From positions 186,001 to 250,000 of IMG/VR virus record IMGVR_UViG_3300042350_002797: a DNA stretch of 64,000 nucleotides; one strand, 5' to 3'. The position numbers and the translations under genes were made by a program. The notes beneath the pieces are model-generated. The model was not told the DNA's origin and made no database searches. It worked only from the letters and a program-made list of their open reading frames with translations. Shown here piece after piece: positions 4,900-32,811 of this stretch (position 1 is its first letter; each line of letters opens with the position of its first letter).

Positions 4900-4909
4900 G
4901 GCCCTTTGA

Positions 4910-5272
4910 TTAGATGTAAGGTTTTAGATTTGGTGGAGACCAGCCTTCTGGTTTAAGAACTTTGCCGTCTTCGCGTTTTCGAACTTTACCAGTTTCGGAA
5001 TCAATTTTGGCAAAGTTGGTGCGCATGACTTCGTTCCATGCTCCTTCGCCATCTGCTCCCATCGAATGAATAGCACCAATAGTAACAACTAGAATATCAA
5101 TTAATGCATCTAATGTTTCTACTTGATCATGATTACTAATTGCTGTAGAAAGTTCTTTGGTTTCTTCTTCAATCAATCCTAAGTACATATTGAATTGATT
5201 CTGGTTAAAATCATCTACATCTTGATCGCAAGCTCGCATGAATCTTTCTTGATCCTTAAACAAATTAGTCAT
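4910..5272 (-). CDS. MazG-like NTP pyrophosphohydrolase (DR2231/PRA-PH type)
   Basis: LIEEE..EL, DALID, RKREDGKVLKPEGW. Confidence 0.85.
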   Translation of the reverse strand: MTNLFKDQERFMRACDQDVDDFNQNQFNMYLGLIEEETKELSTAISNHDQVETLDALIDILVVTIGAIHSMGADGEGAWNEVMRTNFAKIDSETGKVRKREDGKVLKPEGWSPPNLKPYI

Positions 5273-28978: not shown

Positions 28979-29002
28979 AAAAGGGCTCTTCGGAGCCCTT
29001 TT
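28977..29002. terminator. Bidirectional intrinsic terminator
   Basis: AAAAAAGGGCTC-TTCG-GAGCCCTTTT between convergent genes. Confidence 0.85.
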
Positions 29003-30020
29003 ATTTTAATAAACTTTGTTCGTATAATGCAAAACTAGCTAAATTTTTAGCTTTTGATTCGCACATAATATCAAATTGATCATTAAAACTCAATGCCCAT
29101 TGATTAACTGCGGTGTTCCAATAGAAATCACTATGTGCTCTAAGTTTTTGTTTTTTGTGTCCTACTAATAGTAATTGTGTATGATCCGGCAGCGTGTCTA
29201 CACAATGCTTAATAAGTATGTCCTCGCGGCTAACACTATAATGACAGACAGGACGCACCCCGCGCCAGCTATCAATAACACGTTTAACCCTATCGTCATT
29301 AGGTTGGATATACTCTCCTTCACGGATCCAGTGGTGATGTATATCCATAACAATAGGCACAAGGTCGCCAATAAGTAAGCAGTCGTTAAGTCCATAACTT
29401 ATTTCTTCATTTTCAATTGTGAGTGTGTTACGTGCTTCAGGGCTAAGACGTTGATAGGCAGCACGAACACCATCAGGTCCTTGCCTACCAGATATATGTA
29501 CATTAATTTTAAAATCTTGGAAAGTTCGACCATAGCCCATCCAGCGAGCCATGTCTACATGGTATTCAAACTCGTCGATGCTACGGGAGACAATATCTGG
29601 ATCACTGCTTGCCAGAACGCAAAATTGGCCTGGATGAAAAGATAGACGCACGTCACGGCTACGAGCCAACTCACCCACTTGGCTAAACTGTGATTCACAG
29701 TAAGCCCTAACGTCACTGCGACGCCAAAAATAACTCCAAGTCCGCTCAGTGTATACTGGTAAAATGTCAGAACTGATACGAACCATTCTAAGTCGTTCAT
29801 TTAAATCCCCCACTCGTTCAACGAGTAATCTAGTTGCTTCAATATTTTGGACCATGAGGTCCCATAGTTTTTGTTCTGCGACTTCTTTAGATTGCCGATT
29901 TAGCCAAGCCACAGTAGTAGCACCCGTGTTGTATTTTTTACAGTCGTCTTTGGGTTTAATTCCATCCACTTGATGAGGATGGTCGATCCATTTGCAAGCA
30001 AAGCCTATACGTTTAGTCAT
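29001..30020 (-). CDS. uvsE: UV damage endonuclease UvsE/UVDE
   Basis: RIGFAC, RISSDILP, RLSFHPGQF.VL.S, INVH, IENEE, DIHHH, AHSDF, MCESK.K. Confidence 0.92.
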   Translation of the reverse strand: MTKRIGFACKWIDHPHQVDGIKPKDDCKKYNTGATTVAWLNRQSKEVAEQKLWDLMVQNIEATRLLVERVGDLNERLRMVRISSDILPVYTERTWSYFWRRSDVRAYCESQFSQVGELARSRDVRLSFHPGQFCVLASSDPDIVSRSIDEFEYHVDMARWMGYGRTFQDFKINVHISGRQGPDGVRAAYQRLSPEARNTLTIENEEISYGLNDCLLIGDLVPIVMDIHHHWIREGEYIQPNDDRVKRVIDSWRGVRPVCHYSVSREDILIKHCVDTLPDHTQLLLVGHKKQKLRAHSDFYWNTAVNQWALSFNDQFDIMCESKAKNLASFALYEQSLLK

Positions 30021-30026
30021 ATGTAT

Positions 30027-30055
30027 ATTATAAACACATCAGCGCCAGTTGTCAA
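30027..30055 (-). promoter_or_regulatory. Sigma70 promoter; probable leaderless uvsE transcript
   Basis: TTGACA-17-TATAAT with ATG 6 nt after the -10. Confidence 0.8.
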
Positions 30056-30737
30056 CGATAATTGGATCTTGTACGTCCGAAGGTTTTGGTTCACCGTGGA
30101 ACACTAACACTTTAGTTCTAGGATCAATTTTTGGATTTTCGATTGATCTAAAAATACGTTTATTTTCTAATCTTATAACATCTGTTTTGTTTCTTATTTC
30201 CCATTTGTAACTTTGTATCCATTCGTCTGGCCAGAAACAAAAATTAGTTTTAATTTGACTAAAAATCCAGTCTTGATCTCCGTGCATTCTTTTTACAACA
30301 TCTTTTTCTTTTAAAAAGTTTTCCCAGACATACGAGTGACTACCTTTTTCTAGTTTAAAGATACTGCTGTTAAATTTGTTCCAATTTTTTACAGTACTAC
30401 GATTGAAATCCCTTATAATACAAAATTGACCATTGTTGTAGTTCCATAAGTCATCAATCGAGTTTATAACTACAACATCTAGATCAAAGAAAAGAATGGA
30501 ACCAGAAAGAGGTAGTTCATTGCTGAACACCCAGGTTTTGTACCACCAACCTGACAAAGTCACATGAATAGGAATAGGAATAATTTTAATTTTATCATTC
30601 AGTCCACTAGGATTTTCAGTAATGCAGGCAAAGTTAAAAGGAATAGTGCTATTTCTTTTAACCATGTTGTACAATTTGTTTACATAATCAGAGCTGTATT
30701 TTTCTCCATGCTTTAAACATACCAGCCATTTATCCAT
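30039..30737 (-). CDS. Nucleotide-sugar transferase (GT-A fold)
   Basis: CLKHG.KY...YVNKL, FFDLDVV (DxD), GDQDWI, VFHG.PKP. Confidence 0.75.
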   Translation of the reverse strand: MDKWLVCLKHGEKYSSDYVNKLYNMVKRNSTIPFNFACITENPSGLNDKIKIIPIPIHVTLSGWWYKTWVFSNELPLSGSILFFDLDVVVINSIDDLWNYNNGQFCIIRDFNRSTVKNWNKFNSSIFKLEKGSHSYVWENFLKEKDVVKRMHGDQDWIFSQIKTNFCFWPDEWIQSYKWEIRNKTDVIRLENKRIFRSIENPKIDPRTKVLVFHGEPKPSDVQDPIIVDNWR

Positions 30738-31548
30738 TAACTGCCTCGTAAACTTTTTTTATACTTTCTAATAGATCTCTTAATTCGTTTAATGGTATCA
30801 TATTAGGGCCATCACTTGGTGCAGAATTTGGATTCTCATGTGTTTCTATAAAAACTGCATTTACACAACCAGTGGCTACAGCCGCCCTCGCCAAGTATGG
30901 GACCATTGATCTATCTCCACCTGAGCTTGTTCCCATTCCTCCAGGCTGTTGTACACTGTGAGTACAATCAAAGACCACGGGATAACCAGAACGTTCCATA
31001 ATAGGTAGACTACGCATGTCAACCACAAGATTATTGTATCCATGTGTTACTCCTCTTTCACATAACATAATACGATTATTACCAGTACTGGCAATTTTTT
31101 CAGCAGCTTTACTGATATCGTTCGGAGCCATAAATTGGCCTTTTTTAATATTAACAGCAAGGCCTGTTTCTCCTGCTGCTAATAATAAGTCTGTCTGTCT
31201 AGATAGAAAAGCTGGAATTTGTAAAACATCAATATTAGCTTCTTTACAGAGTACGGCTTGTTCAGGATGATGAATATCTGTAAGTGTAGCAACATTTAAA
31301 TTTTGTTTCACTCCAAACATAACATCAAGGCCTTCTTTGATACCTGGACCTCTTTTAGTGCTTATACTAGTTCTATTAGCTTTATCAAAACTGCTCTTAT
31401 AGATAAAGTTCATACCTAATCTATCTGTAATTTCTTTTACAGTTTCGGCTATCATCAAGGCATGTTGTAGTGATTCAATTTGACACGGACCAGCAATAAC
31501 AGTTAATGGTTGGCCTTTACCTATTTTAAAGTTCTTAATTGTAATCAC
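30730..31548 (-). CDS. kdsA: KDO-8-phosphate synthase
   Basis: IAGPCQIES, KSSFDKANRTS, QIPAFL.RQTDLL, NIKKGQF, DCTHSVQQPG, SDGPN. Confidence 0.95.
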   Translation of the reverse strand: MITIKNFKIGKGQPLTVIAGPCQIESLQHALMIAETVKEITDRLGMNFIYKSSFDKANRTSISTKRGPGIKEGLDVMFGVKQNLNVATLTDIHHPEQAVLCKEANIDVLQIPAFLSRQTDLLLAAGETGLAVNIKKGQFMAPNDISKAAEKIASTGNNRIMLCERGVTHGYNNLVVDMRSLPIMERSGYPVVFDCTHSVQQPGGMGTSSGGDRSMVPYLARAAVATGCVNAVFIETHENPNSAPSDGPNMIPLNELRDLLESIKKVYEAVNG

Positions 31549-32138
31549 ACAAATAAATCCTCATTCCATTCTCTATGGCCTTCTCTAAAAGCCATATTGC
31601 TCTGTGTTTCGCGCACTTCTACTCGATAACACCAAAGACGTTCTGCTTCGCCTGGACCCCACATTTCTGGAATGTAAACACCATTAACATACTTGTACAG
31701 CATGTCAGCAAGACCTTCGCAGCCTAATCGAGGCAGCACAACAATCTTGGCCATGTTGCGTTCTTTCAGAAGTTGGAATGTTTCCATTTCTGGATCATCT
31801 TGTGCTACAATTAATGTGTGATCAAATTGATCTTCTAGAATTTTTTTAAGTTCTTTGAGACCGCCATAGTCAGCTGCCCAATTACGCACATCTAAATCGT
31901 CTGTGCCAAAGTAAAACTTCATGCTAAATGAATAGCCATGAATTAGATTACAATGACTATCCGCACGCCATTGTCGATAGGCACATGGAAATGCGTCGTG
32001 ATATTCTTTGGTACTGGTATATTTGTAAGTTCTATTACGAGCAAATGCTCTTCGAATAGTTTCAAGGTGAGCCGCTGCTTCTTCTGAGCTCATATTGGCT
32101 ACATCAATATAATGTATTGTTTTGTTTTCTTGCGACAT
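31545..32138 (-). CDS. queD: 6-carboxytetrahydropterin synthase / PTPS family
   Basis: SHCNLIHGY, DYGGLK, QFDH, VEVRET. Confidence 0.85.
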   Translation of the reverse strand: MSQENKTIHYIDVANMSSEEAAAHLETIRRAFARNRTYKYTSTKEYHDAFPCAYRQWRADSHCNLIHGYSFSMKFYFGTDDLDVRNWAADYGGLKELKKILEDQFDHTLIVAQDDPEMETFQLLKERNMAKIVVLPRLGCEGLADMLYKYVNGVYIPEMWGPGEAERLWCYRVEVRETQSNMAFREGHREWNEDLFV

Positions 32139-32139
32139 G

Positions 32140-32219
32140 CTTATTCTCCTATGTTAATTATAGCATAGGCTTGCAGAATTTGTAAAGCGGGAATGAAAGC
32201 CAGAAAGGCCGCTATGCGT
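32140..32219 (-). promoter_or_regulatory. Structured 5' leader of queD (candidate translational switch)
   Basis: GC-rich leader with alternative pairings GCATAG/CTATGC versus CCTATG/CATAGG, the latter overlapping the SD. Confidence 0.5.
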
Positions 32220-32220
32220 T

Positions 32221-32250
32221 ATTATATACTTATAATTTTGTTATTGTCAA
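32221..32250 (-). promoter_or_regulatory. Sigma70 promoter for queD-kdsA
   Basis: TTGACA-18-TATAAT. Confidence 0.7.
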
Positions 32251-32811
32251 GTTCTTAATATTCTTCCACTGTTCTGGAATTCTCCAACCTTCCGGTTGTA
32301 ATTGTTCAAACTCGATATTAGAGTAATGATCAAATAATTTTTTAAGTTGATAAATCCAAAAATCTGGAGCGACTCTTCTATCATGAGGGCCTGCATAATT
32401 TGCAGTTCCTTTATAGATATTATTGATAAAACTAGTTTTACTCCAAAGGTCAAATCCTAGTAGTATTATTTTTTTTGGATTTTTTAAACAAGCAAGCAGA
32501 ACTGCATAAGGTCCGCTATTCCAATGAAACGGTTGATCTACTTTATTAACACCGGTAAAAGGTAATATAGGTAAAGATTTTACTTGTTGAGTAAGTTTAT
32601 AATTATCAAACCAATCTTCCCTAGTGTAAATTGTTTTATCTTTGTTAGCTTCGTTTCTTAATATTTCGTCAACCATTCTTCGGTCAACCGCAACATATTC
32701 ATCACAAGTGTGATCTCTATGTACTGCATTACACCCTATAGTGTGATCTTTAATTTGATTAAGGGCAAAGCCTTCTCGACTTTGCCCATTGCCTATAACC
32801 CAGATTTTCAA
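32230..32811 (-). CDS. Glycosyltransferase-like / MptE(DUF115)-like Rossmann protein
   Basis: VIGNGQSR, IGCNA..RD, VAVD, NSGP.A, LLGFD; probable TTG start at 32811. Confidence 0.6.
   Translation of the reverse strand: MKIWVIGNGQSREGFALNQIKDHTIGCNAVHRDHTCDEYVAVDRRMVDEILRNEANKDKTIYTREDWFDNYKLTQQVKSLPILPFTGVNKVDQPFHWNSGPYAVLLACLKNPKKIILLGFDLWSKTSFINNIYKGTANYAGPHDRRVAPDFWIYQLKKLFDHYSNIEFEQLQPEGWRIPEQWKNIKNLTITKL

What the first reader, a model, noticed from the sequence alone, without database searches (positions are those of the whole stretch)
32140..32250. Candidate riboswitch-like translational switch upstream of queD
The predicted transcript starts about at GCATAG (32212-32217), which can pair with CTATGC (32163-32168) and enclose GCGG/CCGC and a small hairpin. 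The overlapping CCTATG (32164-32169) can instead pair with CATAGG (32148-32153), covering the AGGAG SD. Mutually exclusive anti-SD and anti-anti-SD helices before a pterin/preQ0 pathway gene suggest ligand or protein control. It does not resemble preQ1-I/II/III or THF motifs as I recall them.
Basis: partly seen in the sequence, partly recalled or inferred. Interest (0 to 1): 0.6.

Follow-up and report, generated by a model that had tools for sequence, protein, structure and literature searches.

The report
Conserved pseudoknot leader before phage pterin-synthase gene
The leader of a phage pterin-synthase-like gene folds into a small RNA pseudoknot, conserved in hundreds of uncultured aquatic phages, that competes with a hairpin hiding the ribosome-binding site; it looks like an undescribed riboswitch-type "on" switch whose signal is unknown.

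Summary
All genes here are on the minus strand. By single-sequence folding they are no better than chance (z = -0.06).

Comparative data change the picture. The same roughly 47-nt element sits in front of this PTPS/QueD-like gene in at least 250 viral contigs. The flanking genes differ between contigs.

The element is an H-type pseudoknot:
- P2 pairs the hairpin loop (GGCUUUCA) with the tail (UGCAAGCC).

Both helices covary: about 90% of cells are paired, against 29-48% in slid controls. In a scan of the whole viral collection, one P2 pair is A-U in at least 120 contigs and G-C in 56. It is mismatched in a single true case, which precedes a truncated gene.

The 3' strand of P2 is also the 5' strand of a hairpin that hides the SD or the start codon. 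That hairpin comes in at least four forms. So forming the pseudoknot should free the ribosome site (ON).

The outer GCAUAG/CUAUGC helix (1 of 159 leaders) and the small hairpin are not conserved.

No Rfam 15 family matches, and I found no paper describing it. The ligand is unknown. The genome has FolE but no QueC or DpdA, so a link to preQ0 is doubtful.

The parts
32221..32250 (-). Promoter-like site: TTGACA (32250..32245), 18-nt spacer, TATAAT (32226..32221). The stop codon of the upstream ORF (32232..32230) lies inside it. Predicted transcript start is about 32215..32213.
   Evidence: 12 of 12 consensus matches. In relatives, -10-like hexamers (TATAAT, TAAATA) end 3-13 nt before P1 in 116 of 159 leaders, most often 7 nt, as here. 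The start site was not measured.
32209..32213 (-). P1 5' strand, AGCGG.
   Evidence: Pairs with 32190..32186. 99-100% of cells are paired, with compensatory variants AGAGG/CCUCU, ACCGG/CCGGU, AGUGG/CCACU and UGCGG/CCGCA.
32202..32208 (-). L1, CCUUUCU. Variable length; positions 2-3 (C, U) never vary.
   Evidence: Entropy is 0 at positions 2 and 3 in the 57 leaders found through the protein alone.
32194..32201 (-). P2 5' strand, GGCUUUCA (GGCUU, an unpaired U, then CA).
   Evidence: Pairs with 32175..32168. Helix 2 is 84-85% paired, and 6-7 of its 9 pairs show changes on both sides.
32191..32193 (-). L2, UUC. The last C never varies and is unpaired, at the P1/P2 junction.
   Evidence: Entropy 0 in 57 protein-ascertained leaders; this base was not fixed by my search pattern.
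32186..32190 (-). P1 3' strand, CCGCU.
32176..32185 (-). L3, UUACAAAUUC. A-rich linker with consensus NUAYAAAYUC.
   Evidence: Mean entropy is 0.40 bit, against 1.14 at third codon positions and 1.67 in the upstream flank. Three of its ten positions were fixed by my search pattern and three more were restricted to two bases each.
32168..32175 (-). P2 3' strand, UGCAAGCC. Its last two bases (CC) are shared with the anti-SD helix.
   Evidence: For the A-U pair next to the junction, collection-wide counts are: A-U at least 120, G-C 56, A.C 1, G.U 0.
32164..32169 (-). 5' strand of the anti-SD helix, CCUAUG.
   Evidence: 99% of cells paired with 32153..32148 in 90 leaders of this type, nearly invariant. 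Rare compensatory forms: CCUAUA/UAUAGG and CUCUAUU/AAUAGAG.
32154..32163 (-). Loop of the anti-SD hairpin, CUAUAAUUAA. It holds a second -10-like word (TGcTATAAT, 32165..32157) that follows TTTACA (32186..32181).
   Evidence: 11 of 12 consensus matches, with a TG before the second hexamer. A sigma-70-like site at this place occurs in 76 of 87 type A leaders but only 5 of 72 others.
32148..32153 (-). 3' strand of the anti-SD helix, CAUAGG. It overlaps the SD, AGGAG (32150..32146).
31545..32138 (-). Regulated ORF: a 197-aa PTPS/QueD-like protein, ATG at 32138.
   Evidence: Pfam PTPS, E = 4e-15. PHROG 2389, 'QueD-like 6-pyruvoyl-tetrahydropterin synthase', E = 2e-36. NCBIfam QueD scores 33.7 bits against a cut-off of 89.

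Best explanation
The 5' leader of the PTPS/QueD-like mRNA (window 32213..32136, minus strand) is a translational switch built on a conserved H-type pseudoknot. P1 (AGCGG/CCGCU) forms first. The hairpin loop (GGCUUUCA) can then pair with the tail (UGCAAGCC) to make P2.

The same tail strand is the 5' strand of a hairpin that hides the ribosome-binding site. In this window that hairpin is CCUAUG/CAUAGG over the SD. In relatives, the tail pairs with the start-codon region or directly with the SD.

P2 and the hiding hairpin therefore cannot both form, and folding of the pseudoknot frees the ribosome site (ON state). I think the most likely trigger is a small molecule bound at the P1/P2 junction, which would make this an orphan riboswitch.

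Shown: the motif, both helices, the shared strand, and the near-exclusive link to this gene. Inferred: the direction of the switch, that a ligand exists, and what it is. My guess for the ligand is a compound with a guanine-like edge (a pterin or 7-deazapurine intermediate, GTP or guanine). The guess rests only on the invariant unpaired C at the junction and on the enzyme that is regulated.
For: - Recurrence: the motif lies upstream of the homolog in 76 of 80 loci found through the protein alone, and these loci have unrelated flanking genes.
- Gene link: 153 of 159 distinct leaders directly precede a PTPS-like ORF, as did 116 of 120 pattern hits.
- Covariation: on a MAFFT alignment not fitted to any structure, 90.7% of cells pair, 10 of 14 pairs change on both sides, no shuffle of 500 does as well, and slid controls give 29-46%. 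An independent set aligned with a model that knows only P1 gives 90.4%.
- RNA, not DNA: G.U pairs occur in P2, so the pairing is strand-specific.
- Collection-wide 2x2 count for one P2 pair: A-U at least 120, G-C 56 of 56 true motifs, A.C 1 true of 7, G.U 0 of 1. The single A.C case precedes a 42-aa remnant of the gene.
- Unpaired bases are as conserved as first and second codon positions.
- Platforms: at least four types all use the P2 3' strand to cover the SD or the AUG. In type B the helix is 90.6% paired, with a C-G to U-A exchange (33 versus 18 sequences).
- Energies are comparable in the window: about -5.8 kcal/mol for the anti-SD hairpin, and -5 to -8 for P2.
- One copy per genome.
- Essentially absent from 185,579 bacterial and archaeal genomes: 2 true hits on small MAG contigs, 56 chance hits.
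Against: - No binding, probing or reporter data exist, so a ligand is pure inference.
- Within the window's own platform type the anti-SD helix hardly varies. Its support there is conservation, not covariation.
- Many of the sequences are close relatives, so cell counts overstate the number of independent events.
- Single-sequence folding does not recover the model.
- The transcript start is not measured. One contig from an RNA library runs about 60 nt beyond the predicted start, so read-through transcripts or DNA carry-over cannot be excluded.
- A promoter-like word inside the leader could produce a transcript that lacks the pseudoknot.
- An ON switch on a biosynthetic gene is the less common logic.
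Confidence: 0.6

Rival explanations
1. The same pseudoknot/hairpin switch exists, but no metabolite sets it. Instead a protein binds the pseudoknot (a phage translational regulator, or the enzyme itself), as in the T4 gene 32 leader. Alternatively, folding kinetics, temperature or Mg2+ set it, for example as a timer in which newly made transcripts are open and older ones close.
For: Everything that supports the structure fits this equally well. T4 gene 32 is a precedent for a 5'-terminal H-type pseudoknot used in protein-mediated autoregulation in phages (established knowledge, not tested here). The motif is restricted to phages. A phage-encoded partner would explain that restriction.
Against: The near-exclusive link to one metabolic enzyme gene and its methyltransferase neighbours is what is typical of riboswitches. 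So are the invariant unpaired bases at the helix junction and the interchangeable platforms on one constant sensor. No conserved partner gene lies next to the motif, since synteny is not kept.
Confidence: 0.27
2. The conserved block acts at the DNA level only. It would be overlapping promoters (TTGACA-18-TATAAT and TTTACA-18-TGcTATAAT), with the inverted repeat AGCGG/CCGCT serving as an operator or as the terminator of the upstream gene.
For: Two strong sigma-70-like sites are present. An inner site is kept in 76 of 87 type A leaders. A TGnTAnnnT word occurs in 113 of 159 leaders, against about 2% of shuffles.
Against: - It does not explain covariation between the loop and the distant, non-palindromic tail, including G.U pairs that would be C.A on the other strand.
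- The inner site is absent from most type B leaders (5 of 72). In type C it abuts the SD, so a transcript from it would lack an SD.
- No terminator-like site was found on this strand here.
- In most loci a promoter-like -10 lies between the upstream gene and P1.
Confidence: 0.05
3. One reading: the 5'-terminal GCAUAG pairs with CUAUGC as the anti-anti-SD helix, enclosing GCGG/CCGC and a small GCC/GGC hairpin.
For: The complementary words exist in this window.
Against: The outer helix is complete in 1 of 159 distinct leaders, which is no more than in swapped controls. Its first bases probably precede the transcript start. The small hairpin shows no covariation and clashes with P1 and P2.
Confidence: 0.02

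Closest known systems
preQ1-I riboswitch (Rfam RF00522)
   Same: - A small H-type pseudoknot with a 5-bp P1. Some relatives even carry AGAGG/CCUCU.
- An A-rich linker after P1.
- An invariant unpaired C just before the P1 3' strand.
- It lies upstream of a gene of the GTP-to-7-deazapurine/pterin enzyme family.
- Control acts on translation.
   Different: - The covariance model does not match, even at E = 10 on a 111-nt query.
- P2 is 7-10 bp rather than 3-4.
- The core is about 47 nt rather than 34.
- L3 ends in a conserved YUC, and L1 has an invariant CU.
- The SD lies 17 nt or more downstream, in a separate hairpin.
- The inferred logic is ON, not OFF.
- The genomes lack QueC and TGT/DpdA.
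SAM-II / SAM-V and preQ1-II pseudoknot riboswitches
   Same: H-type pseudoknots in which a conserved loop and linker line the helices and the 3' strand of the pseudoknot helix is tied to access to the ribosome site.
   Different: In those families the pseudoknot helix itself contains the SD, so ligand binding turns translation off. Here the pseudoknot strand is taken away from an RBS-hiding hairpin. There is no sequence or model match. The one preQ1-II hit scores 13 bits against a gathering score of 47 and aligns only flanking bases, with all 69 structured positions deleted.
T4 gene 32 mRNA autoregulatory pseudoknot
   Same: A phage mRNA with an H-type pseudoknot at the very 5' end of the leader that governs translation of the downstream gene.
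   Different: The gene 32 element nucleates cooperative binding of its own single-strand-binding protein along an unstructured leader. Here the regulated gene is a metabolic enzyme, the leader downstream is a defined competing hairpin, and the loop bases are far more conserved.
THF-II (folE motif) and other riboswitches of folate/pterin genes
   Same: Cis-regulatory RNAs in front of genes of the GTP cyclohydrolase/pterin branch.
   Different: THF-II is a simple hairpin upstream of bacterial folE. Here no Rfam model matches, and the phage's own folE has no copy of this motif.

Membership tests
preQ1-I riboswitch (RF00522) | Match to the family's covariance model | tested here: not met
   No RF00522 hit at E up to 10 on 32125..32235 or 31900..32500, nor at E up to 5 on 14 other loci that carry the motif.
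preQ1-I riboswitch (RF00522) | H-type pseudoknot with a 5-bp P1 and an A-rich 3' linker | tested here: met
   P1 and P2 are both supported by covariation. L3 has the consensus NUAYAAAYUC.
preQ1-I riboswitch (RF00522) | A 3-4-bp P2 whose 3' strand reaches the SD, and a core of about 34 nt | tested here: not met
   P2 is 7-10 bp, the core is about 47 nt, and the SD starts 17 nt after P2 in the window.
preQ1-I riboswitch (RF00522) | Binds preQ1 or preQ0 | not testable with these tools
   Needs in-line probing or calorimetry.
preQ1-II / preQ1-III / THF-II riboswitches | Match to the family's covariance model | tested here: not met
   The only hit is preQ1-II at 13.4 bits (gathering score 47, E = 7.6), with all 69 structured positions deleted. 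Nothing was found for the others.
Riboswitch (generic working criteria) | Conserved structure with covariation, plus conserved unpaired bases | tested here: met
Riboswitch (generic working criteria) | An expression platform that shares a strand with the sensor, and one sensor joined to different platforms | tested here: met
   At least four platform forms reuse the P2 3' strand.
Riboswitch (generic working criteria) | Consistent association with genes of one pathway | tested here: met
   153 of 159 leaders precede the PTPS-like ORF. The rest precede methyltransferase-like or cupin genes, and where I checked (L061, L090, L309) the PTPS-like gene follows close by.
Riboswitch (generic working criteria) | Direct, selective binding of a metabolite that changes expression | not testable with these tools
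   No assay is available; the ligand is unknown.
T4 gene 32-type autoregulatory leader | The regulated product is an RNA/ssDNA-binding protein that binds its own leader | tested here: not met
   The product is a PTPS-family enzyme. Binding was not tested.
Intrinsic terminator of the upstream gene | G+C-rich stem of 5 or more pairs with a short loop, followed by a T run | tested here: not met
   No terminator-like site on the minus strand at 32139..32229. P1 has a 13-19-nt conserved loop, and a promoter-like -10 precedes it.
QueD (6-carboxytetrahydropterin synthase) for the regulated gene | Score above the curated NCBIfam cut-off, and presence of the rest of the preQ0 pathway | tested here: not met
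   TIGR03367 scores 33.7 bits against a cut-off of 89.25. No QueC or TGT in the 364-kb genome, CheckV completeness estimate 100%. In five other large records with the motif, TGT is found in 0 of 5 and only partial PP-loop hits to QueC appear. The HGH motif reads HGY.

The most novel reading that the evidence does not exclude
This is a new riboswitch class that, on present sampling, belongs to phages only. A roughly 47-nt pseudoknot aptamer senses an intermediate of the FolE/PTPS branch (a pterin, a 7-deazapurine precursor or a guanine nucleotide). It switches translation of a non-canonical PTPS-like enzyme and its associated methyltransferases ON during infection. That would point to an uncharacterised phage-made pterin-like metabolite.
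Probability: 0.45. Interest if true: 0.85.

Novelty: new member of a known kind. Interest (0 to 1): 0.72.

Why it matters
Riboswitch classes are normally found in bacteria, and phages are thought mostly to borrow them. Here the evidence for an undescribed motif is comparative and strong. It has hundreds of representatives, two covarying helices, interchangeable expression platforms and a tight link to one enzyme gene. On present sampling it is confined to uncultured aquatic phages, several of them jumbo (190-365 kb).

If it binds a metabolite, three things follow. It would add a new aptamer fold and ligand pair. It would show that phages run their own metabolite-sensing control of an auxiliary metabolic gene. 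And it would give a handle on what the FolE + PTPS-like pair makes in phages that lack the rest of the 7-deazaguanine pathway. The RNA is short and its switch simple, so it is directly testable and could be reused as an ON switch.

Tried and rejected
- **Single-sequence folding:** no signal (z = -0.06). The MFE model does not contain P2.
- **Rfam 15 at permissive thresholds:** nothing real on the window or on 14 other loci.
- **Megablast of the region against cultured phages:** no match. The tblastn hits are at most 53% identical, and the four I inspected have no leader and no motif.
- **Pattern scan of 185,579 bacterial and archaeal genomes:** 58 hits, about the number expected by chance (my estimate). 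Only 2 have the helices.
- **Search for further copies in the window's own genome, by regex and by model:** only the one copy. The phage's folE has none.
rejected.
- **Swapped-partner duplex energies for P2:** only a modest difference (-5.9 against -4.7 kcal/mol), because most tails share GCC. The pair counts are the better test.
- **Shuffling the first 12 nt of the tail:** a weak control, since 80% of shuffles still pair with the RBS window.
- **T4-type late promoter word TATAAATA in this genome:** not enriched (16 found, 76 expected), so I do not call the promoter 'late' here.
- **Mutual-information scan for extra contacts:** nothing beyond P1, P2 and linkage between platform types.
- **Public RNA libraries:** only assembled contigs are available. 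One identical 280-nt contig spans the leader but cannot show a start, a strand or a level.
- **Literature searches:** no description of this motif was found. Subscription journals are not covered.

Full report
**Orientation and the observation.** All genes in this part of the window are on the minus strand.
- The 197-aa ORF at 31545..32138 is a PTPS-family protein: Pfam PTPS at E = 4e-15 and PHROG 2389, 'QueD-like', at E = 2e-36.
- The upstream ORF ends at 32230, which leaves a 91-nt spacer.
- A perfect TTGACA-18-TATAAT site lies at 32250..32221. It places the transcript start at about 32215..32213.
- On this sequence alone nothing stands out. The folding energy equals that of shuffles (z = -0.06), and no Rfam family matches.

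**What relatives show.** The window is part of a 364.5-kb virus record.
- In 76 of those 80 the same block of about 47 nt lies just upstream of the gene, although the neighbouring genes differ.
The first downstream gene was the PTPS-like ORF in 116 of them.
- Over 159 distinct leaders, 153 directly precede a PTPS-like ORF.
- The others precede methyltransferase-like or cupin genes, and where I checked (L061, L090, L309) the PTPS-like gene follows close by, or they are contig ends or mis-called starts.
- There is one copy per genome.
- In 185,579 bacterial and archaeal genomes the pattern hit 58 times, roughly the chance expectation. Only two hits have the helices, and both are on small MAG contigs.
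- Cultured phages whose QueD-like proteins are about 50% identical have no leader and no motif.

**Anatomy (window coordinates, minus strand).**
- P1: AGCGG (32213..32209) with CCGCU (32190..32186).
- L1: CCUUUCU.
- P2: GGCUUUCA (32201..32194) with UGCAAGCC (32175..32168), with one U.C mismatch.
- L2: UUC, ending in an invariant C.
- L3: UUACAAAUUC.

This is an H-type pseudoknot. After it come the anti-SD hairpin CCUAUG (32169..32164) / CAUAGG (32153..32148), the SD AGGAG (32150..32146) and the AUG (32138).

**Evidence that the helices are real.**
- On a plain MAFFT alignment of 58 leaders, P1 is 100% paired and 3 of its 5 pairs change on both sides. P2 is 84.6% paired and 7 of its 9 pairs change on both sides. 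Overall 90.7% of cells pair, against 29-46% when the partner is slid, and no shuffle of 500 reaches the observed values.
- A second, independent set of 91 distinct leaders was aligned with a model that knows only P1. It gives 90.4% paired.
- G.U pairs in P2 show that the pairing is in RNA of this strand.
- For the A-U pair at the junction end of P2, I scanned the whole viral collection for all four combinations. A-U occurs in at least 120 contigs. G-C occurs in 56, all true motifs, on several P1 and P2 backgrounds. A.C occurs in one true motif and G.U in none.
- The single A.C copy (L329) precedes a 42-aa remnant of the gene, while an intact copy with A-U lies 2.2 kb away in front of an intact gene.
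- Unpaired bases are strongly conserved. In the 57 leaders found through the protein alone, L3 averages 0.40 bit per site. L1 positions 2-3 and the last L2 base never vary. Third codon positions of the adjacent gene average 1.14 bit and the upstream flank 1.67. Part of L3 was fixed by my motif-finding pattern, but only 4 of the 80 loci failed that pattern.

**The expression platform.** The 3' strand of P2 is always reused.
- Type A (the window's type, 87 leaders): its last bases start the anti-SD helix. That helix is 99% paired but almost invariant. Rare compensatory forms are CCUAUA/UAUAGG and CUCUAUU/AAUAGAG.
- Type B: the tail UGUCAUC pairs with GAUGGCA across the start codon.
- Subtype of B: UCAUUG pairs with CAAUGG. 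This is a C-G to U-A exchange, 33 against 18 sequences. The helix is 90.6% paired, against 25-68% in slid controls.
- Type C: the tail pairs directly with GGAGACA.

In all of these, P2 and the RBS-hiding helix cannot coexist. In the window their energies are similar, about -5.8 kcal/mol for the hairpin and -5 to -8 for P2. Formation of the pseudoknot should therefore open the ribosome site. That direction is inferred, not shown.

**Where the transcript starts.** In relatives, -10-like hexamers pile up 3-13 nt before P1, most often 7 nt, as in the window. So the element sits at the very 5' end of the mRNA.
- I could not measure the start. Public RNA libraries offered only assembled contigs.
- One identical contig (31998..32277) spans the leader and about 60 nt beyond the predicted start. 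That may be read-through or DNA carry-over.

- The inner GCGG/CCGC helix and the anti-SD helix are confirmed.
- The outer GCAUAG/CUAUGC helix is complete in 1 of 159 leaders, no more than in swapped controls.
- The small GCC/GGC hairpin has no covariation and conflicts with P1 and P2.
- The idea of mutually exclusive helices is right, but the competitor is the pseudoknot.

**What it is likely to sense.** Nothing here identifies a ligand.
- The regulated protein falls below the curated QueD cut-off, and its HGH motif reads HGY.
- The genome has FolE but no QueC and no TGT/DpdA.
- Five other large records with the motif all have FolE, none has TGT, and they show only partial PP-loop hits to QueC.
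- So the preQ0/DNA-modification pathway is not supported, and a pterin-type product is more likely.
- Methyltransferase-like genes repeatedly share the motif or the operon.
- The features are those used to nominate riboswitches: a small sensor with invariant junction bases, one sensor joined to several platforms, and a narrow association with a metabolic gene.
- I put about 0.45 on a true metabolite riboswitch and about 0.6 on the pseudoknot-versus-hairpin translational switch as described.
- The main rival (0.27) is the same switch set by a protein or by folding kinetics. T4 gene 32 is the precedent, from established knowledge.
- A purely DNA-level reading (promoters or an operator) cannot explain the loop-tail covariation.

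**Known relatives and novelty.**
- The closest architecture is preQ1-I: a 5-bp P1, an A-rich linker, and an invariant C before the P1 3' strand.
- The model does not match, however, and P2, the size, the loop signatures, the SD placement and the inferred logic all differ.
- Membership is therefore not claimed.
- No paper describing the motif was found in the searchable library.
- I rate it a new member of a known kind: a pseudoknot-based translational leader switch and an orphan riboswitch candidate.

Noticed in passing
window 32157..32186 (minus strand): There is a second promoter-like site inside the leader: TTTACA, an 18-nt spacer, then TGcTATAAT (11 of 12). Its -10 lies in the loop of the anti-SD hairpin. 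A TGnTAnnnT word occurs in 113 of 159 leaders (about 2% in shuffles), but only 5 of 72 non-type-A leaders have a full sigma-70-like site. It could give a short transcript that bypasses the switch, or it could be conserved for an RNA reason. Unexplained.
   Followed up: partly
window 31545..32138 (minus strand); G000:C1:153855-154382: The 'queD' gene is a divergent PTPS-family gene. It scores 33.7 bits against the NCBIfam QueD cut-off of 89. IHGYSF stands where a solved QueD has IHGHSY. It has an N-terminal extension of about 40 aa that varies among relatives. The genome carries FolE elsewhere but no QueC or TGT/DpdA.
   Followed up: partly
L329:9170-9222 and L329:11401-11453; L309:4108-4160 and 4901-4953; L090:6-58 and 1000-1053: Some phages carry two copies of the motif. 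In L329 one copy, the only A.C mismatch at the tested P2 pair, precedes a 42-aa truncated PTPS remnant. In L309 and L090 the extra copy precedes methyltransferase-like genes. The L090 copy is degenerate, at 34.6 bits.
   Followed up: partly
L299:1050-1077 and its downstream ORF; L184 downstream of the motif: ORFs that I read by eye as GIY-YIG (Seg-like) homing endonucleases (not scanned against any family library) sit right after a complete or truncated motif. In L299 only the P1 hairpin half remains before the insertion. This suggests that mobile endonuclease genes insert between the leader and the gene.
   Followed up: no
L225 and L256 (genome contigs): The only two true motif copies in 185,579 prokaryote genomes lie on short contigs (5.9 and 8.1 kb) of MAGs labelled Bacteroidetes and Chitinophagales. 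These are probably phage contigs binned with the host. If so, this is a weak hint that the hosts are Bacteroidota.
   Followed up: no
window 29001..31548 (minus strand) and loci L008, L028, L039, L059, L143: Neighbours of the regulated gene are not syntenic. In the window they are a KDO-8-P/DAHP-synthase-family gene, a glycosyltransferase-like gene and UvdE. In other loci a HIT-domain gene lies directly upstream and FolE two genes upstream. Others have a phosphoribosyltransferase, a GDP-mannose dehydratase, a B12-radical-SAM gene or an FAD oxidoreductase nearby.
   Followed up: partly
window 31998..32277: A 280-nt contig from an aquatic metatranscriptome library is identical to the window across the leader. 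A marine RNA library holds near-identical and variant copies of the motif, including one with P1 ACCGG. This shows presence in RNA libraries only. It does not show a transcript start or strand.
   Followed up: partly
window 32386..32500 (plus strand): A weak Rfam hit to cow-rumen-3 (18.4 bits against a gathering score of 86.7, E = 0.086) lies inside the upstream ORF on the opposite strand. I take it as chance.
   Followed up: no
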